This document shows, piece after piece, positions 23,056 through 41,100 of a stretch of DNA of 64,000 bases (positions within the stretch are counted from its first letter, which is position 1; each line of letters begins with the position of its first letter). Position numbers and translations under genes: made by a program. The notes beneath the pieces were generated by a model. That model was not told the origin of the DNA. It worked only from the letters and a program-made list of their open reading frames with translations, and made no database searches. Location: the IMG/VR virus record IMGVR_UViG_3300012931_000759, positions 276,393-340,392 of that record. One strand, 5' to 3'.

Positions 23056-23951
23056 TGAGGAAAATCCTTGTTTGCGGTTCAGCTGGATTTCTGATGTCGA
23101 ACATGATGCGGTACATGTTATATCGCACAAAGGATTACGAGTTCGCCAGCATCGACCCATTGCGGAACAAGGAGGACCAGCGCAATATCTACATGCACAA
23201 GAGGCATTCATTCCATGTGGGTGATGTCGGCAATCCCGAACTTCTGGATAGGGTAGTACGCATCGAGAATCCGGACATTGTGGTTATAGGTACCGGAACG
23301 CCGCAACCTATTTACTCTAATGGTGCGGCTGTCGAGGATATTGTTCTCCCGACAGCCTCTGTATGCGACCTTTCCAAGATCTACGGCTTCCGTGTTGTGC
23401 GGCTAGTACCAGATGTGGATATTACAGATATGGGTAGCAGATCCCTGTGGAATCATGTCGAGACCATGGTGTTTGATGTGAGGGGCACAGTTTTACGTAT
23501 GCCAGTATGTTTTGGAAGGAGGGGTCGTGGCTTGTTCGAACAGGCGTTGTGTACAATCCTCTCAGGGCATGCTTGTTCAGGATGGAAACTAGATACTAGG
23601 AAAAGATGGTACGCCTATGCAGAGGATGTGGCTTCTATGCTCTGGTTTATTATGGAGAATCCAACTGTGCGCATTCCTGGACCACCTCCGATCCCAAACA
23701 TAGTCAGGATGCCAGCCCTTGGATGCGCCAATACAGCGGATATGATTGCTATGGCGCATCCTGTGTTGGGGTGGGGACAACCCTTTACATATAATATATA
23801 TATGGGAAAGGAAGAGCCAATATTACCAGGCTGGATGCCAGACTCTAAAGATCTTATTGATGCTGTTTTAAAAACAGCAAAATGGTATACAATGAATAAG
23901 TGGATTTTTGATACAGAAGGCTACATATCCCCTCTATCCGGAGGACGTTAA
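23055..23951 (+). CDS. Divergent RmlB-like NAD-dependent epimerase/dehydratase, possibly non-catalytic
   Basis: ILVCGSAGF Rossmann start, R.WYAYAEDVA, KTAKWY..N; no recognisable STDE or YxxxK. Confidence 0.55.
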   Translation: MRKILVCGSAGFLMSNMMRYMLYRTKDYEFASIDPLRNKEDQRNIYMHKRHSFHVGDVGNPELLDRVVRIENPDIVVIGTGTPQPIYSNGAAVEDIVLPTASVCDLSKIYGFRVVRLVPDVDITDMGSRSLWNHVETMVFDVRGTVLRMPVCFGRRGRGLFEQALCTILSGHACSGWKLDTRKRWYAYAEDVASMLWFIMENPTVRIPGPPPIPNIVRMPALGCANTADMIAMAHPVLGWGQPFTYNIYMGKEEPILPGWMPDSKDLIDAVLKTAKWYTMNKWIFDTEGYISPLSGGR

Positions 23952-23988
23952 AGAAATATCCGCGTGCGCGAGCACTGTCAAGCGGAAA

Positions 23989-25410: not shown

Positions 25411-26949
25411 GTGCCGGTTCGGATCATCATCAATAATATTTGGTCGCGTATTAGCGGTTTGTCCGAGGCTGGCATAGGGCTCGTCGACGATCTTGACCTA
25501 CAGCTGAGTTTCCATATTGAAGGCTATCAGTATATGCGGGCTTTCAAGCAGGGTTGGTATGACAAGGAGAGCGGCCAATGGCGACACTGGGATGGTCGCA
25601 GACATCTGCTCAACCAGAAGATGGTGTTCCCCACCGGGCTTCTGACTAGGGTCACGGCGTTCCTCGATCGGCGTAAGGTCGCGTACGAGTTGAGCGACCA
25701 GCGCGCGCCCGTCGTGGGTGGTGGGCGTTTCGATGTGGCCGGGCGCACCCCTTGGCCGCACCAGAAGGCCGCAGTCGAAGCGGCGCTGAAGGCCGAGCGT
25801 GGAATTATCCGCATTGGGACAGGTGGTGGTAAAACATACATGGCGGCAATGATGATTGCCGAGTACAATATACCGACGATGATATACGTCGTCGGTAAAG
25901 ACCTACTCCACCAGTTTCACCGCGAGATGAGCAAGGCCCTTGGACGCAATAGTGTCGGTATCGTGGGAGATGGATACTGCGATGTGCGCAGATTTACTGT
26001 GTGTTCTGTATGGACTGCCGCCACAGCATTTGGACTGAAGTCTCATGTTTCATTGGATGACGAGGACTGGGCACCAGATATTGTGTCCATAGGCCCCAAA
26101 AGCAAGCGGGCCATTCAGAGTGCTGTGGAGAACGCCAACCTGGCCATTTTCGACGAGGCGCATTTTCTGGCGTGCGAAACAATCCAGGAGATCTTCAAGG
26201 CAAGCAAATGTTGTCGGTACATGTTTGGCATGACCGGCACGGATTGGAGGGATGATGGGGCAGATCTACTCCTAGAGGCCTCGTGCGGCGGGCGCATCTT
26301 CAATATGCCTGCGTCTAAACTTATAGAAATGGGGTACTTGGTCACGCCCAAGATAGCGCTGGTGGAGATGCCGCCGCTCGATGAGCCCTGCCCGAACAGC
26401 TGGAGCGCGGTGTACAGCCGCTACGTGACGCACAACGAAGTCCGGAACCAGGCGATTATTGATGGGGCGCGAAGGCTCATCAACATGGGAAGAAAGGTTC
26501 TGATCCTCGTGCGTTATCTTCCACATGGCCAAAAACTTGTCGACATGCTACAGGATTTGCCCGTATTCTTCGTCAATGGGAGATTGGACGGCGAAACCCG
26601 GCAGGCGGTCAAGGAGCGGTTCGAAAGGGGTGAACTGCGCTGCCTAGTGGCGTCGTCGGTTTTCGACATCGGCGTCGACATTCCGAGCCTAGACGCGCTA
26701 GTACTGGCCGGGGCGGGAAAGTCGACAGTACGCGTCCTACAGCGCATTGGCCGCGTTATACGGGCGGCGGAAGGCAAGAAGGACGCCATTGTGATGGACT
26801 TTATCGACAATGCCAAATATCTCGATAAGCACTCCGCAATCCGTATCGCCGTCTACGAGGCAGAGCCAGGGTTCAGGCTCAAGTTTCCGAAGGGGTTTGA
26901 CCACGACTCGCTCAAACGGATCAAAAAGCTCAAGGCGAAAATCGGCTGA
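25411..26949 (+). CDS. Superfamily 2 DNA helicase (UvsW/XPB-like)
   Basis: GTGGGKT, DEAH, GMTGT, GVDIP, QRIGRVIR, MDFID. Confidence 0.9.
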   Translation: MPVRIIINNIWSRISGLSEAGIGLVDDLDLQLSFHIEGYQYMRAFKQGWYDKESGQWRHWDGRRHLLNQKMVFPTGLLTRVTAFLDRRKVAYELSDQRAPVVGGGRFDVAGRTPWPHQKAAVEAALKAERGIIRIGTGGGKTYMAAMMIAEYNIPTMIYVVGKDLLHQFHREMSKALGRNSVGIVGDGYCDVRRFTVCSVWTAATAFGLKSHVSLDDEDWAPDIVSIGPKSKRAIQSAVENANLAIFDEAHFLACETIQEIFKASKCCRYMFGMTGTDWRDDGADLLLEASCGGRIFNMPASKLIEMGYLVTPKIALVEMPPLDEPCPNSWSAVYSRYVTHNEVRNQAIIDGARRLINMGRKVLILVRYLPHGQKLVDMLQDLPVFFVNGRLDGETRQAVKERFERGELRCLVASSVFDIGVDIPSLDALVLAGAGKSTVRVLQRIGRVIRAAEGKKDAIVMDFIDNAKYLDKHSAIRIAVYEAEPGFRLKFPKGFDHDSLKRIKKLKAKIG

Positions 26950-28813: not shown

Positions 28814-30216
28814 GCGAGATTTCGCTGGACCTGAGGATGCTGGCGTACGCTCTTTCTGACAAAAGGATCCTCCTTGCCATGGCGACCACTGTGCGTGGAG
28901 AGCACTTCAATCCGGAATTTCGGGTACTGTGGGAGTTGGTCTCCAGGTGCTTTGCGAAGTACAAGGACATCCCCACGGCCAACGTACTTGAACATGTTGC
29001 CGACCTGGCGTGGGAGCAGCTAGTCGAGACATACCGCCGGGTTCTTGAGGCTATTCCATTGATCGACAGGCGGGAATATCCGGTCGACCTGGAGAAACTC
29101 AAGGCAAGGGCAAACGACAATATTCTCCGTAGGATGGGACAGCACGTCTACCAGAAGAACTGGAATGGACACGGGTTCGATAACCTACATGAGGCGAACA
29201 AGGCGTTACGTGAAACGGTCTCTAAGCTGGATCAGCTGTACAAGACGGAATCCTACAAGGAAGGCTCTTTGGCAGGGACTGCCTCCGAGGCCTGGGGTAA
29301 GTACCAGCGCACGAAACGTGATCCGGCCTCTGCCGCCGGGATTCATCTTGGATTTGCCGAGTTCGATCGCATCACTAACGGGATCAGGGAAGGCGAGCTT
29401 CTGCTCATTGGCGGCGAGTCCGGCACGGGCAAGTCGGCGCTCTCGATGAACATGGCTGTCAACGCGTGGCTTGGGGCCAACAAGGTGCCGACCGATCCGG
29501 ACGCGGATCCTAAAAACTTCGCTCCCGGCCGTGCGGTGGTGTACTTCTCGATCGAGATGCCCTACGAAGCCCTTGAGAGGCGGCTCCACGCGTGCGTTGC
29601 AGGGGTGCCACTTTACGGCATACGTGACGGCACGCTAGATGTAGCAGAGGAGGCCCGCTACCTGGCCGCCCTTCGGTTTATACAAAAGTACCCGCACCAG
29701 TTCCACATCATCGACATACCGCGCGGCGCGACCATGCGGTACATCGAGACCAAGTACCTGGAGCTATGCCAAGACAATACCGATGATCCCATCCATCTGT
29801 CTGTGGTCGATTACCTGAACCTGATGTCCATGGACGGCGAGGATGAGGGCGGCCCTGATTGGCTAAAAATCGGGAAACTGGGCGAGCAAGCGCATGAGTT
29901 CACCCGCGTCCATGGTACGCCCATGATCTCTCCGGTTCAACTAAACCGCCCGCCCAAGGAGGAGGCAGCAAGGGCCGCGAGGCCGGATCAGGATCGGATA
30001 GCGCGCAGCCTGATGCTGGTCCAGAACGCTAATATGGTTCTAAACATCGAGAAGCGCAAGGATGAGCATTTGACAAAAGACATGAGAGTTCACATAGTGA
30101 AGATGCGCGACGGCGAACAGGGCCTTTTCACCCTACAGAAGAGGCTGGATGCCATGCGGCTGTTCGATGACCCCACGGACTGGACACCCGGATCGTATGA
30201 GGCTGGAAACAATTAG
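28810..30216 (+). CDS. dnaB: Replicative DNA helicase
   Basis: GGESGTGKS, YFSIEMP, VVDYL, QLNR, KMRDGE. Confidence 0.9.
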   Translation: MSEISLDLRMLAYALSDKRILLAMATTVRGEHFNPEFRVLWELVSRCFAKYKDIPTANVLEHVADLAWEQLVETYRRVLEAIPLIDRREYPVDLEKLKARANDNILRRMGQHVYQKNWNGHGFDNLHEANKALRETVSKLDQLYKTESYKEGSLAGTASEAWGKYQRTKRDPASAAGIHLGFAEFDRITNGIREGELLLIGGESGTGKSALSMNMAVNAWLGANKVPTDPDADPKNFAPGRAVVYFSIEMPYEALERRLHACVAGVPLYGIRDGTLDVAEEARYLAALRFIQKYPHQFHIIDIPRGATMRYIETKYLELCQDNTDDPIHLSVVDYLNLMSMDGEDEGGPDWLKIGKLGEQAHEFTRVHGTPMISPVQLNRPPKEEAARAARPDQDRIARSLMLVQNANMVLNIEKRKDEHLTKDMRVHIVKMRDGEQGLFTLQKRLDAMRLFDDPTDWTPGSYEAGNN

Positions 30217-30231
30217 GCGGGGAAAAAGGCC

Positions 30232-30519
30232 ATGCCGATATATGACTACATTTGCGAGGAATGCGGCCACGTCTTCGAGGAGTTTGCGCGTATCACGGAT
30301 CCTCCGATTAATAAATGTCCGGCCTGCGGCCTAACGGGACGCGTATGTCGCCTAATCTCGAGCGGCACAGTTGGCACAGTAGAGATGAACGGTCGGGAGT
30401 ACTTCAATCGTGTCTTAGAACCGGAGGCCAAGCGGATCGCCGAGAAGATTAAGCACGGGGATGATGCCGCAATCGCTGATGTTTTTGGCGAGGGCCCTCC
30501 TGCAAAAAAAGTCGGTTGA
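30232..30519 (+). CDS. FmdB-family zinc ribbon protein
   Basis: MPIYDYICEECG..FE...CPACG...RLIS. Confidence 0.85.
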   Translation: MPIYDYICEECGHVFEEFARITDPPINKCPACGLTGRVCRLISSGTVGTVEMNGREYFNRVLEPEAKRIAEKIKHGDDAAIADVFGEGPPAKKVG

Positions 30520-30544
30520 ATTCCGGCTGCCCTGTGCGTATAAT
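30516..30544 (+). promoter_or_regulatory. Sigma70-type promoter upstream of prkA
   Basis: TTGAAT(30516-30521)-17 nt-TATAAT(30539-30544). Confidence 0.6.
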
Positions 30545-30614
30545 CTCTTTAAACAGGGGAAGGATTGCGTCCCGCTCCGGCCAAAGGCCGGGAAAAACCG
30601 CGAAAGGATGGAGC

Positions 30615-33600
30615 ATGGAAGTGATCAACACCGGCAAAAAGGGCAAGAAGACCAAGGATCAGGAAGAGACGGCGGAGAACGGGGCGCTCGACCTTGTTGC
30701 CCTCATTGAGCAATGTGCGGCCGAAGAGGATCTTGAGCCATGGGAGGGCACGCTTCGCGATTATCTCCCGATGGTACAGGATGATTGTACACTGGCGGAC
30801 ACGGCCCACGCAAGGCTGTGGCGCATGATTGAGACAGTCGGCATCAAGTTCGACGACAAGGATGAGCGGAAAGAGCATCCCGAGTACAGCTTTTTCACCA
30901 ACGAGTTGTTCGGCATCAATGACACGCTGGCCAGCGTCATGGAATATCTCAGGGCTGCCGCAGCTGGATCCGACGTCGCCCGGCGAATCCTGCTCCTATA
31001 CGGGCCCACGAGTTCCGGTAAATCGCAGTTCGCAATCCTCCTTAAGGAGGGTCTGGAGAAGTTCTCGCGCACCAAGGCCGGGCGCATGTTTGCCCTCAAA
31101 GATTGCCCGATGCACGAGAACCCCTTGAACGCGGTGCCCAAGGCTGCGAGGGAGCAATTGAAGGCTAAGTATGGCCTCAATATTGAAGGTGACTTGTGTC
31201 CGCGCTGTGCCTACAGGCTCAAGACCGAGTTCAACGGCGACTTCATGGCTCTGCCGGTCGAGCGCGTGCTCCTGTCCGAGGCCAACCGAGTGGGTATCGG
31301 CACGTTCCAGCCGGCCGATCCCAAGTCGCAGAACCAGTCCGAGCTGACGGGCTCCGTCAACTTCGCCAAGCTGGCCGAGCTGGGCTCGGAGTCGCACCCG
31401 CTGGCTTTCGACTTCAACGGCGAGCTGAACAAGGCCAACCGCGGCATGATGGAGTTCATCGAGCTCCTGAAGGTGGACCGCAAGTTCAGGCACATCCTCC
31501 TGACGCTGGCGCAGGAGAAGCGCATCAAGGCACAGAATTTTCCGCTCATTTTCGCGGACCTAGTAGTAATCAGCCATAGCGTGTCTGGCGATATGCCTGT
31601 TCCCTATAGAGAGAATGGGTTGGTTCGATTTACCACAATGAGGCAACTGTGTGATGCCAACAACACCAACATCGAGGTTCTTGCTGCCGATGCCAATGGC
31701 AAGCCCGCATGGACGAAAGTGAAAGGATTCTATCGTCACCAGTTCTCTGGCAAAATGGTGAAGACCGTACAGGTTGATGGTGTTGTCAACACTACTTGGC
31801 ATCATTCTTTGATTGGCAAGGCGGACAATGCGCCTTTTCTGCCCGAAACGCTTCAAGATGTCCTGGCATTCAGGAATGTTCCTGAACAAACCGAACTTGG
31901 GACATTCGATGTTCCGGTTCCCGATTCGTTGTCCTATTTACCCGTTAATACCCCAGGTATCTTGTCCACGGATTGCTGTGTTCCCGAGCAATCCTTTGCT
32001 CGTGTTAAACCAACTGGCAACAAGAAAAGTGATGGAGAATACGGCAAATATTGGATCAAAACTCGCTACGATTCTTGTTCCGAGGAAGCGAAAGACATTG
32101 TTGCTCTTCTGTGTTGGTATGCTACAGAGGGTCATGTCTCGAATGAGCATGCGATCATTTCCCAAGCCAACCTGGAAACTCTATTTTCCCTGAAGAAGAG
32201 AGCGGAGAGGGTTTCTTCAGCCATAGGGTCTGTGTTTGATCGATCGGATGAGGAGGATCACACTAGCCGCCTTCACCTTTCGGCAAGGGTGTGGCGGGAA
32301 ATTCTTGAGCACAATTGCGGAAGATATAGCGAAAACAAGCGTTTGCCAGATTTTGTGTTCAATTTGCCTCGTGAGTTGCGTGAATTCGCTTTACGAGAAC
32401 TCATAAAGGGAGATGGTCAGACTATGCCATCGTTCGCATCCTGCGAGGAATATGCCAAAAAGTACTTTGCCTTCAAAACGACAAGCATTATTCTGGCAGC
32501 CCAATTCTGCTATTTGGCAAGTTCGCTTGGGTACGATTTTGGCGTACATCATGGATATACGAAAAAGGGAAAGGATTTCTTTGGCATCAATTATCGGGAA
32601 CGAACGAAGCCCATACTAAGGAAAAACAGGATCGAGACCGTTGAGGTGTCCGACAGCGAAGTATTCGATATCGAATGCGTGGACAATCATTCTTTTGTGG
32701 CTGGCGTTGGCAACCTTGTTTGCCACAATACGAATGAGACCGAGTACCTCAAGTTCCTCGCCCAGAAGGAGGAGGAAGCGCTCCACGACCGCCTGTGGGT
32801 CATCAAGTTCCCCTACAACCTGCGCCTCGAGGACGAGATCAAGATCTACGAGAAGCTCATTTCCAGGGCGGCCGGGTTCCAAGGTATCCACATCGCGCCA
32901 CACACCCTGCGCGTGGCGGCGATGTTCGCCATCCTGAGCAGGCTGGAGGAGTCCAAGGACCAGAAGTTCACCCTGCTGACCAAGATGCGCCTGTACAACG
33001 GCGAGAAGGTCGACGGGGCCGGCAAGGAGGACGAGAAGAGGCTGCGCGAGGCTGCCGAGCGCGAGGGCATGGACGGCATCAGCCCCCGCTACATCGTGAA
33101 CCGCATCTCGGCCTGCTTCACCAAGCACGGTCGGACCTACATCACCCCGATGGACATCGTCCGCAGCATCAAGGAGGGGTTCTCCACCAACGCCAAGCTG
33201 TCGAAAGAGGACATCTCGCGGTTCGAGAACATTATCACGACGGTGATGGAGGAGTACAACAAGATCGCAACAAACGAGGTTCAGAAGGCTTTCTTCCTGA
33301 ATTTCGAGCACGAGATCAAGGATCTGCTCAATAACTACATCGACAACGTTGGTGCCTATCTGGACGATGACAAGATCCAAAACCACTGGGGCGAAATGGA
33401 GGAGCCGAACCACCGCCTCATGAGGAGTGTCGAGGAGAAAATTGGCATCACCGACGGCGGCAAGGATGCTTTCCGCCAAGAGGTGTACCGCAAGATGATC
33501 AAGAGCAAGAGCGAGACGGGCGACTACGACTACCAGAACCATCCGCGCCTGAAGGAGGCGCTACAGAAGCAGTTGTTCGAGGAGCGCAGCGACATCATCA

Positions 33601-33752
33601 GGCTGACGGTGTCCGTGCGGAATCCTGATGCCGATGCGCTCAAGCGGCTGAACGAGGTCATCAAGACCTTGAGCGAAAAATGCGGTTACACTCCGGAGAG
33701 CGCCAATGATTTGCTGCGTTATGTCAGCAGCATATTGGCGAAAAACAGCTAG
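30615..33752 (+). CDS. prkA: PrkA/YeaG AAA+ protein kinase, intein-containing
   Basis: LLLYGPTSSGKS, CPMHENPL, GIGTFQP.D, GELNKANRGMMEFIE, H|TNETEY, HIAPHTL, EGMDGISPRY. Confidence 0.92.
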   Translation: MEVINTGKKGKKTKDQEETAENGALDLVALIEQCAAEEDLEPWEGTLRDYLPMVQDDCTLADTAHARLWRMIETVGIKFDDKDERKEHPEYSFFTNELFGINDTLASVMEYLRAAAAGSDVARRILLLYGPTSSGKSQFAILLKEGLEKFSRTKAGRMFALKDCPMHENPLNAVPKAAREQLKAKYGLNIEGDLCPRCAYRLKTEFNGDFMALPVERVLLSEANRVGIGTFQPADPKSQNQSELTGSVNFAKLAELGSESHPLAFDFNGELNKANRGMMEFIELLKVDRKFRHILLTLAQEKRIKAQNFPLIFADLVVISHSVSGDMPVPYRENGLVRFTTMRQLCDANNTNIEVLAADANGKPAWTKVKGFYRHQFSGKMVKTVQVDGVVNTTWHHSLIGKADNAPFLPETLQDVLAFRNVPEQTELGTFDVPVPDSLSYLPVNTPGILSTDCCVPEQSFARVKPTGNKKSDGEYGKYWIKTRYDSCSEEAKDIVALLCWYATEGHVSNEHAIISQANLETLFSLKKRAERVSSAIGSVFDRSDEEDHTSRLHLSARVWREILEHNCGRYSENKRLPDFVFNLPRELREFALRELIKGDGQTMPSFASCEEYAKKYFAFKTTSIILAAQFCYLASSLGYDFGVHHGYTKKGKDFFGINYRERTKPILRKNRIETVEVSDSEVFDIECVDNHSFVAGVGNLVCHNTNETEYLKFLAQKEEEALHDRLWVIKFPYNLRLEDEIKIYEKLISRAAGFQGIHIAPHTLRVAAMFAILSRLEESKDQKFTLLTKMRLYNGEKVDGAGKEDEKRLREAAEREGMDGISPRYIVNRISACFTKHGRTYITPMDIVRSIKEGFSTNAKLSKEDISRFENIITTVMEEYNKIATNEVQKAFFLNFEHEIKDLLNNYIDNVGAYLDDDKIQNHWGEMEEPNHRLMRSVEEKIGITDGGKDAFRQEVYRKMIKSKSETGDYDYQNHPRLKEALQKQLFEERSDIIRLTVSVRNPDADALKRLNEVIKTLSEKCGYTPESANDLLRYVSSILAKNS
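31578..32729 (+). mobile_element. Intein (Ser1...His-Asn, +1 Thr) with LAGLIDADG endonuclease in prkA
   Basis: SVSGD start, TTWHHS block B, WYATEG and LIKGDG motifs, VFDIEC..NHSF...CHN end; removal restores VISH-TNETEY; lower GC. Confidence 0.9.
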
Positions 33753-34334
33753 ATGGCCAATGAGATTTGTGCCAGATGCGGCAGACCGAGAAAAGTGGCC
33801 GAAAGAACGCCAGATGGTCCAATTTGCCACAACTGCTACAAAAAAGAGCACATTGAGCCATGCCGGTTCTGTGGGAAACAGAAAGCAGTTGCTGCCCGAG
33901 ATGATAACGGCGCGGCCATCTGCGACAACTGTAACAAAGAACACAACAAATGTTCGTGTTACGTGTGCCATGAAGTTAGACAAGTTCGTGCGCGTGCGGA
34001 AAACGGACAGCCACTGTGTCTTGCTTGTCATCGTTTGACTAATCTTGGACAGTTTTTCGCATCGTACAAGAGAGGAGCCAGCCTGCGCGGTCATATATTC
34101 GAACTCACGTTGGATGAGTTTGAACAATTGGTGCGCAGGCCATGCTGGTACTGTGGACGCTACAACCGGGGAGAAATTTTCAGCGGCGTGGACAGAATCG
34201 ACAGTTCATGCGGCTATGTTCGAACCAATGTGCTACCGTGCTGCGGCGAGTGTAACCTGATGAAAGGTTCCTTGTCCAAGGACGCGTTCCTTGCTAGCAT
34301 TGTGCGCATAGCCAGACATTTGGAAAACAAATGA
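33753..34334 (+). CDS. HNH endonuclease with three tandem N-terminal zinc-ribbon repeats
   Basis: CARC..CHNC, CRFC..CDNC, CYVC..CLAC; then FELTLDEF..PCWYCG..GVDRIDS..GY..NVLPCCGECNLMK. Confidence 0.75.
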   Translation: MANEICARCGRPRKVAERTPDGPICHNCYKKEHIEPCRFCGKQKAVAARDDNGAAICDNCNKEHNKCSCYVCHEVRQVRARAENGQPLCLACHRLTNLGQFFASYKRGASLRGHIFELTLDEFEQLVRRPCWYCGRYNRGEIFSGVDRIDSSCGYVRTNVLPCCGECNLMKGSLSKDAFLASIVRIARHLENK

Positions 34335-35500
34335 ACGACTCCTACAAGGACATCTGGGAACTCCGACAGCCCGGTCGACGCGACTCAGAACGCCATAAGG
34401 TGCGTATCAGAAAGGCTATCAAGGAGAACCTACGGGAGCTGATCGCGGAGGAGAATATCATCTCCTCCGACGGCAAACGCAAGGTCAAGGTTCCGGTGCG
34501 CTACCTTGATATGTGGCGATTTAAATTCGGTCCTAATTCTAAGTCCAAGGATGTTGGTCATGGCGAAGGTGATCCTGGCGACATCATTGCCAAGGAAGGC
34601 AAGGGGAAAGGTAATAAGGCAGGTGACCAGCCGGGTGAGGAGTTGTACGACGAGGAGGTCGAACTAGCCGAAATCGTGGACATGATGCTGGAAGACCTCG
34701 GCCTCCCATGGTTAAAGCGGAAAGAGAATCAGGTCGAGATCGAGACAGAAGAGATGGTTTTCCACGACATCGCCGAGAAGGGTCTTCCCCCGAACGTCGA
34801 CCTGAAGCGGACACTCATCGAGAACCTGAAGCGGAACTCTATCGCCGGGAAGCCCTCGTTCGGCAAGATTGTGCCGGACGATCTGCGGTACAGGGTGTGG
34901 GAGAATGTGGTAGAGAAGCACTCTAACGCATCTGTAATCCTAATCATGGACCGCTCCGGGAGCATGACGGACGATAAAAAGTATATCGTGAAGTCTTTCT
35001 TCTTCTGGATGGTTAGTTTCCTGCGCATGAAATACGGGAATGTGGAGGTCGTCTTCATCGCGCACGACACCGAGGCCAGGGAGGTGGGGGAGGAGAACTT
35101 CTTTGCCATCTCTGATGGGGGAGGCACGCGCATCAGTTCCGGGCTGGAGCTGGCCAAGACGATCATCGAGACTAGGTTCCCCACAAACATCTGGAATAAC
35201 TACGTCTTCTCGTTCTCGGACGGCGAGAATTGGGATACGGACAACGAGCGCTGTATAGCCATGTTCAGAGAGTTACTTGGGATGTGCCAGGCGGTTGGAT
35301 ATGGGGAGGTGTCGTATACCGATCAGTTCTACAGCTGGTCCTCGTGGCGCGGCCACTGGTCGACCCTCCACGATGCCATTAAGGAGGCGGACGACCTAGT
35401 TGGGGAACCGAGATTCCTACAGGCGGCAATCGTGAAGCGCGAGGACCTATACGACTGCCTGCGTCAGTTTCTGGATGTCGACGGGAAGGAGAAGCCATGA
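34331..35500 (+). CDS. yeaH: YeaH/YhbH (DUF444) vWA-domain protein
   Basis: D.ERHK.RI..AI.ENL, DLRYR, MDRSGSM, FIAHDTEA, GGTRISS, FSDGENW. Confidence 0.92.
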   Translation: MNDSYKDIWELRQPGRRDSERHKVRIRKAIKENLRELIAEENIISSDGKRKVKVPVRYLDMWRFKFGPNSKSKDVGHGEGDPGDIIAKEGKGKGNKAGDQPGEELYDEEVELAEIVDMMLEDLGLPWLKRKENQVEIETEEMVFHDIAEKGLPPNVDLKRTLIENLKRNSIAGKPSFGKIVPDDLRYRVWENVVEKHSNASVILIMDRSGSMTDDKKYIVKSFFFWMVSFLRMKYGNVEVVFIAHDTEAREVGEENFFAISDGGGTRISSGLELAKTIIETRFPTNIWNNYVFSFSDGENWDTDNERCIAMFRELLGMCQAVGYGEVSYTDQFYSWSSWRGHWSTLHDAIKEADDLVGEPRFLQAAIVKREDLYDCLRQFLDVDGKEKP

Positions 35501-36966
35501 GGGACAGTCGCATCGTTGACTTGGAGCAGCTGGCGCGCAAGAACGGGCTCGATTTTTTCCCGGTGGTATTCGAGGTCGTAAGCGAGAATACGATGAACAA
35601 CGTGTGCGCCTACGGCCTGCCCACCAGGGCCAGGCACTGGAGTTACGGTCGTTCGTACGACCACCAGCGGATCTATGGGGAGATGGGGTTTTCGAAGGTG
35701 TTCGAGATGATCACCAACAACGATCCCTCGTACGCATTCGTCCTGGATAGCAACACGGAGGCCCAGAACCTCCTGATCGTGGCCCACTGTTTCGGGCACA
35801 GCGACTTCTTCAAAAACAATATAACATTCCAGGGCAGTGACCGCAACATGGCGCGGCATGCCGCGGAGCACGCCAACAGGATCGATGAGTACATCGAACA
35901 ATACGGCCTAGATGCGGTCGAACGCCTGATGGATATCGGTTTCAGCCTCGATTCCCATATCGATGTCCACAAGGGGCTGTATCGTAAAAAGTACCCAAGG
36001 AGGCACATCGAGGAGCGCCGGGTGAAAGCGAACGAGTTCGACGACCTGGATCCAGCCAAGGCTAGGCGGCCCTCCATGATCCGCGAGGTGGTAAACGCCA
36101 CCATGCCTCCTCACCCAGAGAGGGACTTGTTGTGGTTTTTCATCCAATATGCGCCATTGGAGGACTGGGAGCGCGACATTCTCGACATCGTGCGTGAGGA
36201 GTCGTTCTATTTCTATCCACAACGCCTAACCAAAATCATGAATGAAGGCTGGGCCGTTTACTGGCATGCTGAACTTTTACACCAATACAAGAATATCACG
36301 CCCGAGGAGATGATCGATTTTGCGCGTACCCACGAACGGGTTGTTCAGCCGGGAAACCCGTTCGACATTAATCCGTACTATCTCGGTTATAGAATCTACA
36401 AAGACATAGAGAAGCGCTGGGATAGGATGTATGCCGAGGGCGAATCGTCCATCACGGGCCGCCAGAAAATTTTCGAGGTTCGGCGTGACGAGGACGACGT
36501 GTCATTCCTGCGCAACTACCTGACGGCCGACTTGGTCCAAGAGCTGAAGCTATTCACCTTTGGGCGCGAGAACGAGGAGCCGGATCAGGACGAGGATGAG
36601 GAGGTCCTGTACGAGATCAAGAGCCGTATGCGCGAAGAAGTTGTCGAGGCCTTGGTGAAACCCCGGTACAATAACTGGGCACCCAAGATCGTGATCACGG
36701 ACGCAAGCTCCGAGAAGATCTGCCTGCGGCACGAAAGTGAGGAACTGGGCACGCTCAATTTCCGGTACGCCGAGCATATGCTTGAGTACGTTTGGGAGCT
36801 TTGGGCTGCGCCCGTGGAGTTGCGGACCAAGGACGACAATGGCAGGGAGGTTGTGCTCCTGTTCGACGAGGCTGGATTTTCGCAGCGAACACTTGAGGAG
36901 GAGTTTGACCTCGATGATGATGGAGACGAGGAAAAGGACGAGGGTCCGTTCAAGAAGACCCCTTAG
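35497..36966 (+). CDS. spoVR: SpoVR/YcgB family protein
   Basis: HWSYG, AHCFGHSDFFKNN, LEDWERDIL..VREE..YFYPQ..TKIMNEGWA..WH, NPYYLG. Confidence 0.93.
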   Translation: MRDSRIVDLEQLARKNGLDFFPVVFEVVSENTMNNVCAYGLPTRARHWSYGRSYDHQRIYGEMGFSKVFEMITNNDPSYAFVLDSNTEAQNLLIVAHCFGHSDFFKNNITFQGSDRNMARHAAEHANRIDEYIEQYGLDAVERLMDIGFSLDSHIDVHKGLYRKKYPRRHIEERRVKANEFDDLDPAKARRPSMIREVVNATMPPHPERDLLWFFIQYAPLEDWERDILDIVREESFYFYPQRLTKIMNEGWAVYWHAELLHQYKNITPEEMIDFARTHERVVQPGNPFDINPYYLGYRIYKDIEKRWDRMYAEGESSITGRQKIFEVRRDEDDVSFLRNYLTADLVQELKLFTFGRENEEPDQDEDEEVLYEIKSRMREEVVEALVKPRYNNWAPKIVITDASSEKICLRHESEELGTLNFRYAEHMLEYVWELWAAPVELRTKDDNGREVVLLFDEAGFSQRTLEEEFDLDDDGDEEKDEGPFKKTP

Positions 36967-36977
36967 CGGAGGAAAGT

Positions 36978-37538
36978 ATGGCAAGGGTTTGTATCACCGG
37001 GCACCGCCCGGATCCTTTTCTGGTGTCGCATTACCAACTTGAGGCTGTGGAACGTCTCGCTGGCAATGTTACCTGCGCGCTCAAGCGCGAGTACGGCGAC
37101 GAGCTGATGTTCAACTTAGGTGGAGCTGTGGGCGCTGACCAATGGATGGGCGCTGCCGCCATTGAACATGGCGTGAAGTACAGCCTATTCCTGCCGTTCT
37201 TGCCACAGATCCAGGCCCGTTACTGGGACGAGCAGCAGCGCGACGAACTTGACCGCCAGATGAAGGGCGCCGCTAAAATCGTGATCGTAGATCCATCGGG
37301 CCAATACGACGTTGCCAAATACTACGAGCGCGACCGCCTGATGGTGGACGAGGCCGATTTTGTCGTGGCGTTCTGGGTCGGCCGTCGACGCGGAGGCACC
37401 TTTGAGACGATGAAGTATGCTCTATCCAAGTCGAAATTTGTACTCAACGCCATGGATCACCTGCGTCCTGTGTTCAAGCAGGACTTGGAGAGCGGATGGA
37501 CTCCGCCACACTTGAGAGGGGAAACCGAAGATGAATAA
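36978..37538 (+). CDS. YspA/DUF1273-like SLOG-fold protein
   Basis: CITGHRP, GGAVGADQW, LPF..Q...W, RDRLMVD, GGTFET..YA. Confidence 0.8.
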   Translation: MARVCITGHRPDPFLVSHYQLEAVERLAGNVTCALKREYGDELMFNLGGAVGADQWMGAAAIEHGVKYSLFLPFLPQIQARYWDEQQRDELDRQMKGAAKIVIVDPSGQYDVAKYYERDRLMVDEADFVVAFWVGRRRGGTFETMKYALSKSKFVLNAMDHLRPVFKQDLESGWTPPHLRGETEDE

Positions 37539-38175
37539 TGGGGTCAAGACCCGTCGCTACCTTGTGAACAACGAGGAAATCCTTGTGCTGATTGAATCCT
37601 GGCGGAATGCTAACCAGCACGAGAAAACCAAGCTTGCGAACCAGGTAGTTTCTCGTCTCGCCTTCCTTGTTCACTCCAAGATTAGGCTCCACAAGGGGTC
37701 CCCACTGTACGACGATCTCCTCCAGGAGGGGCGGCTAGGTATCATGAAGGCCCTTCAGGATTTCGAGCCTGAACGTGGCCGTAATTTTTTCATGTTCGCC
37801 ACTTGGCATATTCAAACTAGGGTGCGCCGACTACTTCTGCGCGAGGTGCGTCGTTGCGAGTCCCCGGCTGGAGATATGCTGCTGGTGGCCAAAAGTGTCT
37901 CCGAGACCCGCGAGCACCTCCTAGCGCAGGAGACCGGCACTGCCCTTGAGAGTCGGGAGAGCTGCGGTGCTATTATGAAAGTGCTGAGTTTCCTGTCGGA
38001 CAGCGACCGCAAAGTGCTAGTTATGCGTTTCGGCTTCGACGGCGAAGAGCCTCGTACATTCCAGCAAATCGGGAACGAACTTGGAATTTCCAAGCAGCGC
38101 GCACAGCAAATCGAAGCCGGTGTTTTGCGCCGTCTGCGCAGGAATAATGAGCTTATGGACCTAATTGGTGGGTAG
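37531..38175 (+). CDS. Sigma70-family RNA polymerase sigma factor (regions 2 and 4)
   Basis: DDLLQEGRLGIMKALQDFEPERG..F..FATWHI; MRFGFDGEEPRTFQQIGNELGISKQRAQQIE. Confidence 0.9.
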   Translation: MNNGVKTRRYLVNNEEILVLIESWRNANQHEKTKLANQVVSRLAFLVHSKIRLHKGSPLYDDLLQEGRLGIMKALQDFEPERGRNFFMFATWHIQTRVRRLLLREVRRCESPAGDMLLVAKSVSETREHLLAQETGTALESRESCGAIMKVLSFLSDSDRKVLVMRFGFDGEEPRTFQQIGNELGISKQRAQQIEAGVLRRLRRNNELMDLIGG

Positions 38176-38184
38176 GAGAGTGGT

Positions 38185-41100
38185 ATGCCGATGATCTACT
38201 TGGTGGATGACATCGAATCCACTATCAAGAGAATGTTATCTGACGAGGAGCTGAGGGGTCTTGGTCTCAACAAGATCAAAGTGCGCCGAACCCTATCCTC
38301 GTTTAGGGGTGACGAGATTGCCGCTTCCGTTTTTCTCAAGAAATACGCCCTGCGTGATGCTGATGACGAGGTAGCCGAGCTGACCTTGGAGGAGGCCAAG
38401 GATCGGTGGGCGGTTGCCATCGCCAAGGGGGAGGAGCTGTTCTCTGGCGAGCGCAAGGAGGCTCCGTACTTCCGTGAACTGTATGAGCATTTCCTACCGG
38501 CTGGCCGCCAGATGTTTGCTTTGGGTAACAGCCAGATGAGAAACGTAACGTTCACGAATTGTCTGTCTGGCAGCACATTTGTGCCAACGGACGCAGGTTT
38601 ACGGAAATTGGATGCGCTGTCCAAGACAAAGGTGCGCCTGAACGGCAAAAGCTATATGGCCAAGGTTTGGCGCACGGGATCCAAGCTCGTTAGACGGTTG
38701 GATACTGTTGAAGGGTATTTTGCCCTGCCGACTGGCGACCATCGGTTCCAATTAGTCGATGGATCTTGGCGTTCTGTGGACAAACTCCAGCCCGGTGACC
38801 GCATTGTGTTGGGACATGATAGTAGGCCTTTTGGTCCTTCTAATGAACATGAAGAATTGAGAGGTTTTGCGGCTGGCCTATTTGTTGGAGTTGGTACATT
38901 TGCCGGTGAAGGTTTCCAGGTCGCAAATGTGCGTCTGTTCGGGAAGAATTCAAGATTCTTGGTGGAAAAGATTGCCAGTTTGTATGGTGGCAGTCCTCTC
39001 TCTCATGCTGAACATATATCCTATAACAGTACAGCATGGGCGCGCGATATGTTCGAAAGTACAGGCATCCAGCACGGCAATAAAACGATCACTGATCGTC
39101 TCATGTCCCAATCATGGTCGTTCCTGCGTGGTTTTTTGCGAGGACTGTTTGATGCCAATGGATGTGTTATTGATAGCCAAAAAAACCACCAGCGGCAGAT
39201 CGTGCTGGTCCAATCGGATCGCGACATGCTATGTCGGGTACAGATCCTCTTGTTGGCGTTTGGTATTCGTTCGGTCATATACAAGGGAGAATTTCCCAAG
39301 GGTGTTTTTCAGTGTCGACAAGGATGGTCTTTACACATTAGTAGACGTTCGTTCGAGACATTTGCCGAGTTCATAGGATTTGCGCATCCAAGCAAGGCGG
39401 CAAAGATGCGCACTGCGTTGAACCGTGCGCCTTTTAAGCCGGACATTTGGTATGCTCGTGTCAAAAGCGTAACGAATTTTCAACGCATGGATGTGTACGA
39501 TATGAGTGTTTTTGGTATACATGCGTTTCCGGCAAACGGTTTGGTTGCCCATAACTGCTATGTTACCCAGATCGAGGATGACAGTATTGAGGGCATCTAT
39601 GGCGCGGCCCAGAAACTGGCCAAAACATACTCGTACGGCGGCGGCATCGGACTGTGCGTGGGTGAATTGCGCCCTGCGGGCGCGCGTGTGTCGAACAGTG
39701 CGCGCCAGTCGACCGGCTCCGTCAGCTTCATGGAGCTGTTCTCGCTGACGACGGGCCTGATTGGCCAAGCGGGGCGCCGTGGCGCCCTAATGATTACCAT
39801 GCCAGTATCCCATCCAGACGCAGAAGAGTTCATCGAGGTCAAACACGGGAACACTGACAAGGTTAAGTACGCGAACATTAGTCTGAAACTGACCGACGAG
39901 TTCATGCAGGCCGTCGTCGAGGACAGGATGTTCCGGCAGACCTACACCACGAAGCATGAGACGGTGTGGCGCGAAGTGCGCGCCCGTGACCTATGGCAGA
40001 AAATCATCCAGAGCGCCCGTGACTCGGCAGAGCCCGGCCTGATGTTCTGGGATCGCATGGTGACCATGTCGCCCTCGGAAATTTACCCGAGATTACAAGT
40101 CCATAGTACTAATCCTTGTGTGACGGGAGATACTTTAGTTGCGACGCCTTCTGGCTGGAAAAGGGCCGATTTATTCCAAAAAGGCGATCATATTTCTACT
40201 GTGTGTGGTTTCGGTTTGGTCGAAAGAGTAGAAACACATCATAATGTACCGGTCTACAAAGTAGAATTTTCAGACGGAACGATATTGAAAGTAACTGCTG
40301 CCCATCAGTTCCATGTGGCAAAAAAGGATACAAAAACAGAAAAATATCCAAGGAAATATACTCCTACCAGGCTAGATCAAATGGAAGTTGGGGATTTTGT
40401 AAGGGCTTCTGGTTTCGAATGTCCAGATCTGCCAGAAGGCCAATTAAAAGATTTTTGTGACGCTTTTTTGGCTGGTGTGTTGTTGGGAGACGGATGTTAC
40501 ACTCCAAAAATGACAGCTAGTAAAGTGGTAAAGATTGCATCTGATATCAGAGACAATAAATGGAACGAGCTACTAAAGAGCAAATTTGGAGAACGTGGTG
40601 TGATATTATCTTGCTACGGGGCGACAGATGGGTCATGTTCTTGTAGTCTTACCTCGCAGAATGGCGACTTGGTGAGCTTGGTGGACGAATTTGGTCTGGT
40701 TCACACATATTCTTATCATAAGCGTATTCCTGATCATTTGTGTTTTGGAAACAAAGAACAAATGCGAGGTGTTCTAGATGGTCTTTTCTCCACTGATGGA
40801 AATGTGAATCTTAGCGGAGACTCTCCACAGATAAGGTTGAAATCCACATCACGGTTTATGTTGGCCCAAGTTAAGAGAATGCTTCTGATGTTTGGCATAT
40901 TCTCGTCATTGGGGAATGTCGGTAAAACTTCAATAATACTTGGGCGAAAAGTAAAATCACGAGACCGATACGAATTGGTTGTGAGCGGGCAAAGTGTCGA
41001 TTTTTTCATCAGACGTATAGGGATCTCTCATCCAGCAAAGAAGGCGTTATGCCAAGATTTGCTTTTGAATTGGGCTTTGACTGGTAACACTTGGAGAGTA

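What the first reader, a model, noticed from the sequence alone, without database searches (positions are those of the whole stretch)
31578..32729. Ser1/Thr+1 intein in a PrkA/YeaG kinase
Seen: a 384 aa intein inserted at H|TNETEY, downstream of Walker B in the AAA domain, with Ser as first residue and Thr as +1 nucleophile. Established: inteins cluster in replication and nucleotide-metabolism proteins. I do not recall PrkA as a described host, though I cannot verify this. Inference: homing implies prkA is conserved among co-infecting relatives, and splicing could gate kinase activity.
Basis: partly seen in the sequence, partly recalled or inferred. Interest (0 to 1): 0.6.

Follow-up and report, generated by a model that had tools for sequence, protein, structure and literature searches.

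The report
Mobile intein in huge-phage PrkA
A self-splicing, self-spreading protein insert (an intein with its own DNA-cutting enzyme) really does interrupt the ATPase core of the PrkA gene of a 340-kb wetland phage. The same insert at the same site is common in related phages and in several bacterial phyla, so it is an ordinary member of a little-described intein family.

Summary
Window 31578-32729 is an in-frame 1152-nt (384-aa) insertion in prkA (30615-33752). It is flanked by ...VVISH|S...CHN|TNETEY and is exactly absent from two syntenic huge-phage alleles. It carries every class-1 splicing residue: Ser1, block B T-x-x-H, block F Asp and the terminal His-Asn, with Thr+1. It also has the [R/K]-H "NX" motif of oxyester (Ser1) inteins and two LAGLIDADG motifs with their acidic residues. 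An AlphaFold model matches PI-PkoII, VMA inteins and PI-SceI. The site is the C-terminal end of strand beta4 of the AAA+ core, two residues before the sensor-1-type Asn.

It is not rare. The same allele ("PrkA-b") was found in at least 50 PrkA proteins. These come from huge-phage contigs and from about 30 bacterial species genomes (Chloroflexota including cultured Oscillochloris trichoides DG6, Planctomycetota, Acidobacteriota, Latescibacterota, Pseudomonadota). Related PrkAs have two further intein sites.

Three results point to recent horizontal homing. GC3 is 0.49 in the intein against 0.79/0.87 in the exteins. The distribution on the extein tree is patchy. The intein and extein trees disagree (p-AU 1.5e-32).

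No searchable paper names PrkA as an intein host. I found no evidence of regulatory gating. Verdict: a real, canonical, probably active selfish intein, and a new member of a known kind.

The parts
30615..33752 (+). prkA precursor gene (1045 aa + stop): N-extein, intein, C-extein
   Evidence: Pfam AAA_PrkA E=3.9e-101 and PrkA_C E=5.5e-68. ATG 30615 is preceded by AAAGGATGGAGC. The protein is 92% identical over the exteins to the intein-less P0008.
30615..31577 (+). N-extein (321 aa), ends ...ADLVVISH
31002..31025 (+). Walker A / P-loop GPTSSGKS
   Evidence: In the model of the empty allele, strand E124-129 precedes it and helix 137-149 follows it. The Walker A Lys is needed for ATP binding in B. 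subtilis PrkA (PMC9512850).
31440..31472 (+). Walker B region RGMMEFIELLK (beta3)
   Evidence: It is strand E278-281 in the P0008 model, and E279/I281/E282 are invariant in 26 homologues.
31554..31577 (+). Last N-extein residues ADLVVISH (strand beta4), with A/T-ending codons: candidate co-conversion tract
   Evidence: P0008 model strand E314-322. The window reads CTA GTA GTA ATC AGC CAT where the empty alleles read CTG GTG GTG CTC AGC CAC.
31578..32729 (+). PrkA-b intein, 384 aa, Ser1 ... His-Asn, bifunctional (Hint splicing domain + LAGLIDADG endonuclease)
31578..31607 (+). Intein block A SVSGDMPVPY (Ser1 nucleophile)
   Evidence: S1 is present in 50/50 site-b inteins. S1, V2, G4, P7, P9 and Y10 are invariant in A1.
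31731..31754 (+). NX motif YRHQFSGK (Arg53-His54), the signature of Ser1 oxyester inteins
   Evidence: H54 is present in 50/50 and is preceded by R/K in 40/50. It aligns to IRHDYSGK of PI-PkoII. The motif is defined in PMC10189870.
31788..31817 (+). Intein block B NTTWHHSLIG (Thr73-x-x-His76)
   Evidence: T73 and H76 are present in 50/50.
32106..32135 (+). LAGLIDADG motif 1 LLCWYATEGH (catalytic Glu184)
   Evidence: Glu in 47/50 and Gly185 in 49/50. The fold matches PI-PkoII, PI-SceI and I-DmoI.
32391..32420 (+). LAGLIDADG motif 2 LRELIKGDGQ (catalytic Asp279)
   Evidence: Asp in 49/50 and Gly280 in 49/50. phmmer aligns this stretch to PI-PkoII residues 340-440.
32658..32705 (+). Intein block F EVFDIECVDNHSFVAG (Asp364; conserved Cys367)
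   Evidence: D364 and C367 are present in 50/50.
32709..32729 (+). Intein block G GNLVCHN (penultimate His383, terminal Asn384)
   Evidence: N384 in 50/50, H383 in 48/50 and C382 in 43/50. TIGR01443 intein_Cterm scores 18.3 bits on the protein and 23.5 bits in the genome scan; the cut-off is 15.6.
32730..33752 (+). C-extein, starts Thr+1-Asn-Glu (TNETEY). The Asn is at the sensor-1 position at the end of beta4.
   Evidence: N322, E323 and E325 are invariant in 26 homologues. In the model, beta4 (E314-322) is followed by helix 323-331.
33753..34334 (+). Neighbour, independent of the intein: free-standing Cys-rich HNH/EndoVII-like endonuclease gene between prkA and yeaH
   Evidence: PHROG 1035 E=2.4e-12 and PHROG 3118 E=6.8e-11. 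It is present in L016, L020 and L023 and absent in L018, L019 and L021.
34331..36966 (+). Operon partners yeaH (DUF444/VWA, 34331-35500) and spoVR (35497-36966)
   Evidence: Pfam DUF444 E=2.5e-91 and SpoVR E=6.1e-111. The same order is found in all related loci.

Best explanation
Window 31578-32729 encodes a canonical class-1 intein of the oxyester (Ser1/Thr+1) subgroup that carries a LAGLIDADG homing endonuclease. It sits in the AAA+ ATPase core of the PrkA protein of an uncultured ~340-kb wetland phage.

Inferred mechanism, from the conserved residues and the established chemistry of class-1 inteins:
- The 1045-aa precursor undergoes an N-O acyl shift at Ser1, helped by the block B Thr-x-x-His and the NX-motif His54.
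- Thr+1 performs a trans-esterification.
- Asn384 cyclises, helped by His383 and the block F Asp364.
- An O-N shift then yields a 661-aa PrkA with an intact ...SH-TNE... sensor-1 strand and a free 384-aa endonuclease.

During co-infection the endonuclease would cut intein-less prkA alleles at the conserved H|TNE-coding site. Repair from the intein-bearing allele would copy the intein in (homing). This phage lineage acquired the intein recently from a lower-GC donor. The element is most likely selfish. Its only effect on the host protein is that PrkA is inactive until splicing has happened.
For: Shown:
- The 1152-nt in-frame insertion is exact relative to two syntenic phage alleles of 86% and 84% nt identity.
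- All splicing residues are present, and S1, T73, H76, D364, N384 and the NX His54 are conserved in 50/50 homologous inteins.
- The LAGLIDADG acidic residues are kept in 47/50 and 49/50.
- intein_Cterm scores above its cut-off. PI-PkoII is found by sequence at E=3e-9.
- An AF2 model (pLDDT 75, pTM 0.81) matches PI-PkoII at E=1.7e-14, TliVMA/PhoVMA inteins, PI-SceI, PI-PfuI and I-DmoI.
- GC3 is 0.49 in the intein against 0.79/0.87 in the exteins, and the codons beside the junction end in A/T.
- The window's PrkA sits in a 12-member clade (support 100) in which it is the only site-b carrier. At least 14 changes of state are needed on the extein tree.
- The intein's sister is P0026 (support 99), but the exteins reject that pairing (delta lnL 132, p-AU 1.5e-32).
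- A 38-kb contig from a public wetland run spans the locus with 0 differences.

Inferred: the splicing chemistry, endonuclease activity and homing themselves.
Against: There are no expression, protein or cleavage data, so splicing competence and endonuclease activity are inferred from residue conservation only. The nearest intein relative is only 58% identical, so the donor lineage was not sampled and 'recent' rests on composition alone. The AF2 model has low confidence at residues 70-96 and 124-137, which include block B and a window-specific 16-aa insertion. The co-conversion tract was noticed post hoc. The sample of homologues is biased, because intein carriers rank higher in a search that used an intein-containing query.
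Confidence: 0.85

Rival explanations
1. The intein has been domesticated as a conditional switch. Splicing would respond to a signal such as redox state, pH, temperature or nucleotide state, and so would time activation of the phage PrkA-YeaH-SpoVR module during infection.
For: The insert splits beta4 two residues before the sensor-1 Asn, so the precursor should lack ATPase activity. The allele is old and is retained in several bacterial phyla and in a phage clade. Two cysteines next to the C-terminal active site are conserved in an otherwise oxyester intein: C367 in 50/50 and C382 in 43/50. Conditional splicing is documented for other inteins (discussion in PMC4760082).
Against: The distribution is patchy, and close relatives that lack the intein keep the same operon, so the intein is dispensable. 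The endonuclease catalytic residues are under purifying selection and composition is foreign; both fit an actively mobile selfish element. Insertion in a conserved active-site motif is the general rule for inteins and needs no regulatory explanation.
Confidence: 0.1
2. The insert is a decayed, non-splicing intein, so this phage's prkA is effectively a pseudogene or is expressed only as an endonuclease carrier.
For: There is no direct evidence of splicing. The window's intein has a private 16-aa insertion (about residues 124-140) with low model confidence. Some relatives show decay: P0027 has a 251-aa version, and some bacterial copies end in Ser-Asn or Ala-Asn.
Against: Every catalytic residue is intact in the window's copy. 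The reading frame is open through 1045 codons. The exteins remain 92% identical to intein-less homologues with GC3 of 0.79-0.87, as expected for a gene under selection. The private insertion lies in the linker/DNA-recognition region, not in a splicing block.
Confidence: 0.04
3. The junctions are an assembly chimera between a phage prkA and an unrelated intein-containing gene.
For: The GC content changes abruptly at both junctions, and the record comes from a metagenome.
Against: The insertion is in frame and exact to the codon. It is homologous to inteins at the identical site in at least 50 independent assemblies. A Logan contig of 38,227 nt from a public run spans 29800-34600 with no differences, although that run may be the source sample.
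Confidence: 0.01

Closest known systems
PI-PkoII / PI-TkoII (Thermococcus kodakarensis DNA polymerase Pol-2 intein, PDB 2cw7)
   Same: It is the best sequence match (E=3e-9) and the best structural match (E=1.7e-14, TMq 0.62). Both are bifunctional, with a Hint domain and a two-motif LAGLIDADG endonuclease. Both have the R-H NX motif, block B T-x-x-H and a C-terminal His-Asn. PMC10189870 cites it as a characterised Ser1/Ser+1(Thr+1) oxyester intein.
   Different: The host protein is different (family B DNA polymerase against the PrkA AAA+ ATPase). It comes from an archaeal hyperthermophile. It is 537 aa, with an extra domain. Identity in the structural alignment is only about 15%.
Cysteine-independent (Ser1/Ser+1 or Thr+1) class-1 inteins with the NX motif (Pasch et al. 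2023, PMC10189870), for example PolB16, Psp Pol-1 and Mja/Mvu TFIIB inteins
   Same: It has Ser1 and Thr+1. The NX His is invariant and preceded by Arg/Lys, and the block B His is invariant. The TFIIB mini-intein 5o9i is the second PDB sequence hit.
   Different: PrkA was not mentioned in the passages of that paper that I read; the paper counts 16 alleles, which I did not see listed. The PrkA-b inteins are not cysteine-free: C247, C367 and C382 are conserved.
Inteins in P-loop/AAA+ ATPase motifs (DnaB, RecA, RFC-S, PolIII gamma, MCM; Novikova et al. 2015, PMC4760082), and archaeal LonB inteins (the latter from memory)
   Same: The insertion is inside a conserved nucleotide-binding motif of an ATPase core. 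The distribution is sporadic and the intein carries a homing endonuclease.
   Different: The host is a stress and starvation-response protein, not a replisome protein. The site is the sensor-1 strand, not the P-loop or Walker B. PrkA is absent from that paper's main text and from its table of the top 15 bacterial intein hosts.
PrkA/YeaG family (PDB 9xip 'serine protein kinase'; B. subtilis PrkA; E. coli YeaG)
   Same: The exteins match 9xip through the natural empty allele (E=8.7e-127), with ...IVLGH|TNEPEY at the site. The prkA-yeaH-spoVR gene order is kept.
   Different: The phage-encoded copy is interrupted by an intein. NCBIfam PRK15455 scores only 233.8 bits against a cut-off of 576. PrkA genes of isolated phages (Thermus phiYS40/TMA, Ralstonia RsoM2USA) have no intein.

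Membership tests
Class-1 intein | Nucleophile (Cys/Ser) as the first intein residue (block A) | tested here: met
   Ser1 starts SVSGDMPV. It follows the extein His directly, at exactly the boundary of the 1152-nt insertion. Ser is found in 50/50 homologues.
Class-1 intein | Block B Thr-x-x-His | tested here: met
   T73-W-H-H76. Both residues are present in 50/50.
Class-1 intein | Block F Asp and block G penultimate His + terminal Asn, followed by a Cys/Ser/Thr +1 extein residue | tested here: met
   D364 in 50/50, H383 in 48/50, N384 in 50/50, and Thr+1 in all. TIGR01443 scores above its cut-off.
Class-1 intein | Hint (horseshoe beta) fold | tested here: met
   The AF2 model matches solved inteins: 2cw7, 7qsu/7qss/7qst, 1vde, 1dq3, 5o9i. 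Model confidence is moderate (pLDDT 75) and low around block B.
Class-1 intein | Demonstrated protein splicing | not testable with these tools
   It needs expression and SDS-PAGE or mass spectrometry.
Ser1 oxyester ('cysteine-independent') intein subgroup | Ser1 with Ser/Thr+1, and the NX motif His preceded by Arg/Lys (PMC10189870) | tested here: met
   R53-H54. His is found in 50/50 and R/K in 40/50. It aligns with R-H of PI-PkoII.
Class-3 intein | No N-terminal nucleophile; Trp(B:12)-Cys(F:4)-Thr(G:5) triplet | tested here: not met
   Ser1 is present. The block F position that would hold the nucleophile is Asp364, and G:5 is Cys, not Thr.
LAGLIDADG homing endonuclease (two-motif, monomeric) | Two LAGLIDADG helices, each ending in an acidic residue | tested here: met
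   CWYATE184GH and LIKGD279GQ. Conservation is 47/50 and 49/50.
LAGLIDADG homing endonuclease (two-motif, monomeric) | alpha-beta-beta-alpha-beta-beta-alpha fold, duplicated | tested here: met
   The model's residues 169-340 alternate helices and strands. Foldseek hits include I-DmoI, I-Tsp061I and WhiA LAGLIDADG domains, and the endonuclease domains of PI-SceI and PI-PkoII.
LAGLIDADG homing endonuclease (two-motif, monomeric) | Site-specific cleavage of the intein-less allele | not testable with these tools
   It needs an in vitro cleavage assay on DNA of the empty site (L016 or L018 type).
PrkA/YeaG family | N-terminal AAA_PrkA ATPase domain plus PrkA C-terminal domain | tested here: met
   PF08298 E=3.9e-101 and PF06798 E=5.5e-68. 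The empty allele matches PDB 9xip at E=8.7e-127. Its model has an AAA+ fold that matches FtsH, Lon, BchI and ClpB.
PrkA/YeaG family | Operon with YeaH (DUF444) and SpoVR/YcgB | tested here: met
   yeaH lies at 34331-35500 and spoVR at 35497-36966.
PrkA/YeaG family | NCBIfam equivalog PRK15455 above its cut-off | tested here: not met
   It scores 233.8 bits against a cut-off of 576. The intein splits the match, and the phage clade is divergent from the enterobacterial YeaG type.

The most novel reading that the evidence does not exclude
The prkA-yeaH-spoVR starvation module is an unrecognised intein hot spot shared by bacteria and huge phages, with three sites in PrkA and one in SpoVR. On this reading, the sensor-1 intein (PrkA-b) is retained because its slow oxyester chemistry delays or conditions activation of the PrkA AAA+ protease/ATPase. 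The conserved Cys367/Cys382 pair beside the C-terminal junction might also contribute. In the phage this would time a host-proteome-degrading function during infection.
Probability: 0.07. Interest if true: 0.7.

Novelty: new member of a known kind. Interest (0 to 1): 0.3.

Why it matters
The finding adds PrkA/YeaG to the list of intein hosts. PrkA/YeaG is an AAA+ protein that has recently been tied to starvation-induced global proteolysis in E. coli (PMC13684143) and to sporulation control in B. subtilis (PMC9512850).

The intein family behind this one copy is sizeable. It has at least 50 members at the sensor-1 strand. Related genes have a second site (Cys1/Ser+1) and a third, and SpoVR carries its own inteins.

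For intein biology it gives a new, well-populated allele of the rare Ser1/Thr+1 oxyester subgroup, and that allele carries the NX motif. This subgroup is the one sought for cysteine-independent protein ligation tools.

For phage biology it documents an intein-rich huge phage with at least 7 inteins. It also gives a clean case of intein exchange among phage lineages, with sister intein clades in phages and in bacteria.

It does not reveal a new mechanism.

Tried and rejected
- Pfam and PHROGs on the intein alone gave nothing. Only NCBIfam intein_Cterm and weak hits to intein-containing equivalogs appeared. This explains why most site-b carriers lack intein Pfam labels.
- The search for related loci with the single intein found no relative in IMG/VR. 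It worked only with the six-sequence alignment A1.
- tblastn against GenBank phages found PrkA in 17 records, none with an intein.
- Paper searches for PrkA + intein, 'serine protein kinase' + intein and jumbo phage + intein found nothing relevant. Novikova 2015 does not mention PrkA in its main text, and its supplements are not held. InBase could not be consulted.
- Reads: only Logan contigs were available. No intein-less variant of the same strain was seen. The three 'joints' skipping about 1.3 kb have sides under 30 nt at 85% likeness and come from unrelated prkA genes, so I discard them.
- A class-3 intein was considered and rejected (see the membership test).
- An assembly chimera was considered and rejected.
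- Seven sequences whose alignment to the reference split the intein were left out of the trees. They were L028, L037, L040, L045, P0127, P0130 and P0135, mostly copies ending in Ser-Asn.
- P0027 (251-aa intein) was left out of the intein tree.
- The big representative search, complex prediction and the atlas searches were not used, because no claim depended on them.
- I did not send a joined (spliced) extein sequence to any search or fold tool. The mature product was represented by the natural intein-less homologue P0008. Inside scripts, intein columns were removed only to compute extein identities and trees.
Full report
**Setting**

The window is the last 64 kb (276393-340392) of a 340,392-bp linear IMG/VR virus record, which CheckV estimates to be 84% complete. 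All long ORFs lie on the + strand. They include a PhuZ-like tubulin, helicases, a DnaB-like helicase, a sigma factor, ribonucleotide reductase, ThyX and PhoH. The only public runs that hold the gene in full are wetland metagenomes.

**Observation**

The ORF 30516-33752 most plausibly starts at ATG 30615, behind a Shine-Dalgarno-like AAAGGATGGAGC. Its 1045-aa product matches Pfam AAA_PrkA (E=3.9e-101, split into two stretches) and the PrkA C-terminal domain (E=5.5e-68).

Translating 31578-32729 gives 384 residues, SVSGDMPV...GNLVCHN. They are preceded by ...ADLVVISH and followed by TNETEYLKF.

The closest homologue without an insert is P0008, which is 660 aa and 92% identical over the exteins. 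It reads LVVLSH|TNETEYLKF.

At the DNA level I compared two syntenic huge-phage contigs:
- L016, a Logan contig, 86% nt identity.
- L018, NCBI CACVFB010000001.1, 305,730 bp, 84% nt identity.

Both align to the window's gene with a single gap of exactly 1152 nt at this place.

**It is an intein**

Sequence evidence:
- NCBIfam intein_Cterm (TIGR01443) scores 18.3 bits on the protein and 23.5 bits in the genome scan, against a cut-off of 15.6.
- phmmer against the PDB finds PI-PkoII (2cw7) at E=3e-9. The match covers the second LAGLIDADG half and the C-terminal splicing block. The TFIIB mini-intein is the second hit.

I collected DNA loci for five homologous inserts and aligned them as A1. With further proteins I then aligned 50 site-b inserts. 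The residues conserved in that set are:

| Element | Residue | Present in |
|---|---|---|
| Block A | Ser1 | 50/50 |
| Block B | Thr73-x-x-His76 | 50/50 |
| Block F | Asp364 | 50/50 |
| Block G | Asn384 | 50/50 |
| Block G | His383 | 48/50 |
| LAGLIDADG helix 1 (CWYATEGH) | Glu184 | 47/50 |
| LAGLIDADG helix 2 (LIKGDGQ) | Asp279 | 49/50 |

Structural evidence: an AlphaFold2 model built on A1 has pLDDT 75 and pTM 0.81. By Foldseek it matches PI-PkoII (E=1.7e-14), the TliVMA and PhoVMA inteins, PI-SceI, PI-PfuI and free LAGLIDADG enzymes such as I-DmoI. Confidence is low for residues 70-96 and 124-137. The second stretch is a 16-residue insertion private to the window's copy.

**Chemistry**

Ser1 with Thr+1 puts the element in the minority 'oxyester' subgroup of class-1 inteins. 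Pasch et al. 2023 (PMC10189870) counted 58 such inteins of 16 alleles in InBase. They defined a signature for the subgroup, the NX motif: a His preceded by Arg or Lys, upstream of block B.

The window's intein has R53-H54 in YRHQFSGK. The His is present in 50/50 homologues and the preceding R/K in 40/50. The motif aligns with IRHDYSGK of PI-PkoII. That paper names PI-TkoII and the Mja TFIIB intein as the characterised Ser1 inteins, and these are the two PDB hits found here.

A class-3 mechanism is excluded. Ser1 is present, and the block F position that would hold the class-3 nucleophile is Asp.

The four-step splicing pathway I give under the best explanation is inferred from these residues and from established intein chemistry. 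It was not shown here.

**Where it sits in PrkA**

The natural empty allele P0008 stood in for the spliced product.
- P0008 matches the solved 'serine protein kinase' 9xip at E=8.7e-127, with ...IVLGH|TNEPEY at the site.
- An AF2 model of P0008 (26-sequence alignment, pLDDT 79) has the AAA+ order of elements: strand 124-129, the P-loop GPTSSGKS, the Walker B strand 278-281 (MEFIE), helix 288-300, strand 314-322 (DLVVLSHTN) and helix 323-331.
- The model's fold neighbours are FtsH, Lon, BchI and ClpB.

The insertion therefore lies between His320 and Thr321, at the C-terminal end of beta4. That is two residues before the invariant Asn322, which occupies the position of the AAA+ sensor-1 residue. 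The sensor-1 assignment rests on established AAA+ topology (as in the 'ATN' motif of classical AAA proteins). His320, Asn322, Glu323 and Glu325 are invariant in 26 homologues.

An unspliced precursor should lack a functional ATPase site; this is an inference.

**How common it is**

A full-length search listed its best 120 PrkA relatives. Pairwise alignment to P0008 showed two insertion sites in this clade:
- Site a: ...GD(T)K|C...SHN|SQSQSEL. It uses Cys1/Ser+1, is 405-421 aa long and is recognised by Pfam.
- Site b: the present one.
- Three proteins carry both.

A search restricted to the intein returned 31 proteins. All but one weak hit were PrkA, and some are annotated as coming from Latescibacteria and Ardenticatenales MAGs. 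One protein has a third site.

A scan of one genome per prokaryotic species, using the intein alignment, found 32 loci. Of these, 30 are PrkA site-b inteins with ...GH|SV.G...N|TNEPEY. They come from:
- Chloroflexota: Oscillochloris trichoides DG6, which is cultured; Ca. O. fontis; Roseiflexaceae.
- Planctomycetota: Gemmatales, Fimbriiglobus.
- Acidobacteriota.
- Latescibacterota.
- Pseudomonadota.

One carrier, L022, lies on a 110-kb contig beside enolase, gyrB and gyrA, so it is chromosomal. IMG/VR added three more phage carriers. PrkA genes of isolated phages (Thermus phiYS40/TMA, Ralstonia RsoM2USA) and of four published huge-phage genomes have no intein.

**Mobility**

- Composition: the intein's GC is 0.47 and its GC3 is 0.49. 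The exteins have GC3 of 0.79 and 0.87, and the genome's GC is 0.557.
- Junction codons: the six codons before the junction read CTA GTA GTA ATC AGC CAT in the window, where the empty alleles read CTG GTG GTG CTC AGC CAC. Asn+2 is AAT instead of AAC. This looks like a short co-conversion tract from a lower-GC donor, but I noticed it post hoc.
- Intein tree (49 rows): the inteins split into a phage clade and a bacterial clade, each with support 100. The window's intein pairs with that of P0026 (support 99, 58-60% identity).
- Extein tree (126 rows): the window's PrkA sits in a clade of 12 (support 100), in which ten members have no intein and one has only the site-a intein. P0026 branches near the base. 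Site b needs at least 14 changes of state and site a at least 15.
- An AU test on the exteins rejects a window+P0026 clade (delta lnL 132, p-AU 1.5e-32).

Together with the conserved endonuclease residues, this is the classical signature of a homing intein that cycles through gain, spread and loss. P0027 has a truncated 251-aa version, and some bacterial copies end in Ser-Asn or Ala-Asn, which suggests decay in some lineages. One caveat applies: the homologue sample is enriched for intein carriers, because the query contained the intein.

**Function of the host gene**

The 'kinase' label is doubtful. B. subtilis PrkA showed ATPase and ATP-dependent protease activity but no kinase activity (PMC9512850). 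E. coli YeaG is required for starvation-induced global proteolysis (PMC13684143). A phage copy of the prkA-yeaH-spoVR module might drive host proteome turnover during infection. That is speculation and lies outside this finding.

**Regulation**

Nothing here indicates conditional splicing. The only hints are the active-site location and two conserved cysteines beside the C-terminal junction, Cys367 (50/50) and Cys382 (43/50). Close relatives keep the same operon without the intein, so the intein is dispensable.

**Literature**

No searchable paper links PrkA or YeaG with inteins. The survey of prokaryotic inteins (PMC4760082) does not mention PrkA in its text or in its top-15 table, and its supplements are not held. 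InBase was not available. Public annotation is inconsistent for these proteins: 'serine/threonine protein kinase', 'LAGLIDADG family homing endonuclease', or JGI's 'Ser/Thr protein kinase/intein/homing endonuclease'.

**Reads**

Only assembled contigs were available. One 38-kb contig, possibly from the source sample, spans the locus with no differences. A freshwater run holds a 97%-identical contig that ends exactly at 32730, the first C-extein base; this may reflect polymorphism at the junction. The reported joints are short matches from unrelated prkA genes.

**Verdict**

The finding is real and accurately described. It is a canonical, probably active, horizontally acquired Ser1/Thr+1 LAGLIDADG intein at the sensor-1 strand of a huge-phage PrkA. 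It belongs to a widespread intein allele that appears not to have been described in the literature. It is a new member of a known kind and of modest interest.

Noticed in passing
G000:C1:109143-113240, 148932-151796, 164186-168448; window 38185-42591: The phage genome is intein-rich. A GyrB-like ORF holds two inteins, one ending ILCHN|T-DSDVDG, which is another Thr+1 junction. A UDP-glucose dehydrogenase holds one, and an unannotated 1421-aa ORF holds one. The 1468-aa RNR large subunit in the window holds at least one, at about residues 155-457, with signs of a second.
   Followed up: partly
window 33753-34334 (+): A 193-aa ORF lies between prkA and yeaH. It has repeated CxxC zinc-ribbon units and an HNH/EndoVII-like C-terminus (PHROG 1035 E=2.4e-12; PHROG 3118 E=6.8e-11; no Pfam hit). 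Homologues of 40-50% identity occupy the same slot in L016, L020 and L023, and the slot is empty in L018, L019 and L021. It looks like a free-standing mobile endonuclease gene and is independent of the intein, because L016 has it without the intein.
   Followed up: partly
L020:10908-13565; L022:12496-15189: SpoVR, the third gene of the module, carries its own LAGLIDADG intein in a related phage contig (885 aa) and in a bacterial chromosome contig (897 aa). The window's SpoVR (489 aa) has none.
   Followed up: no
relatives P0016, P0057, P0069 etc.; P0006/P0007/P0028 (both sites); P0136: PrkA has a second, Pfam-recognised intein site (GD.K|C...SHN|SQSQSEL, Cys1/Ser+1) in the loop before the SELxGS motif. 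One protein has a third site near reference position 263. Site a is as patchy as site b, needing at least 15 changes on the extein tree.
   Followed up: partly
window 32730-33900 (run X3, record 18): A 1263-nt contig from a freshwater metagenome is 97% identical to the C-extein and ends exactly at 32730, the intein/C-extein junction. This may reflect an assembly break at a polymorphic insertion site.
   Followed up: no
window 31560-31577 and 32733-32735: The codons beside the intein end in A/T (CTA GTA GTA ATC AGC CAT ... AAT) in a gene with GC3 of about 0.8. Empty alleles have G/C-ending synonymous codons there. All sampled phage site-b alleles use CAT for His-1, while the empty alleles use CAC. 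This is a candidate co-conversion tract.
   Followed up: partly
L021:1-1793; L023:1-1998: The UvsW/ResIII-type helicase upstream of the DnaB-like gene carries an intein (Hom_end_hint/LAGLIDADG_3) in two related phage contigs. The window's copy (25411-26949, 512 aa) does not.
   Followed up: no
window 23908-25398; 37531-38175; 43794-45080; 60565-62031: Other genes in the window are a tubulin/PhuZ-like protein, a sigma-70-type factor next to a YpsA/GTP-binding-like ORF, a PIN-PhoH fusion and a long ThyX. ARAGORN finds no tRNA genes in the window.
   Followed up: no
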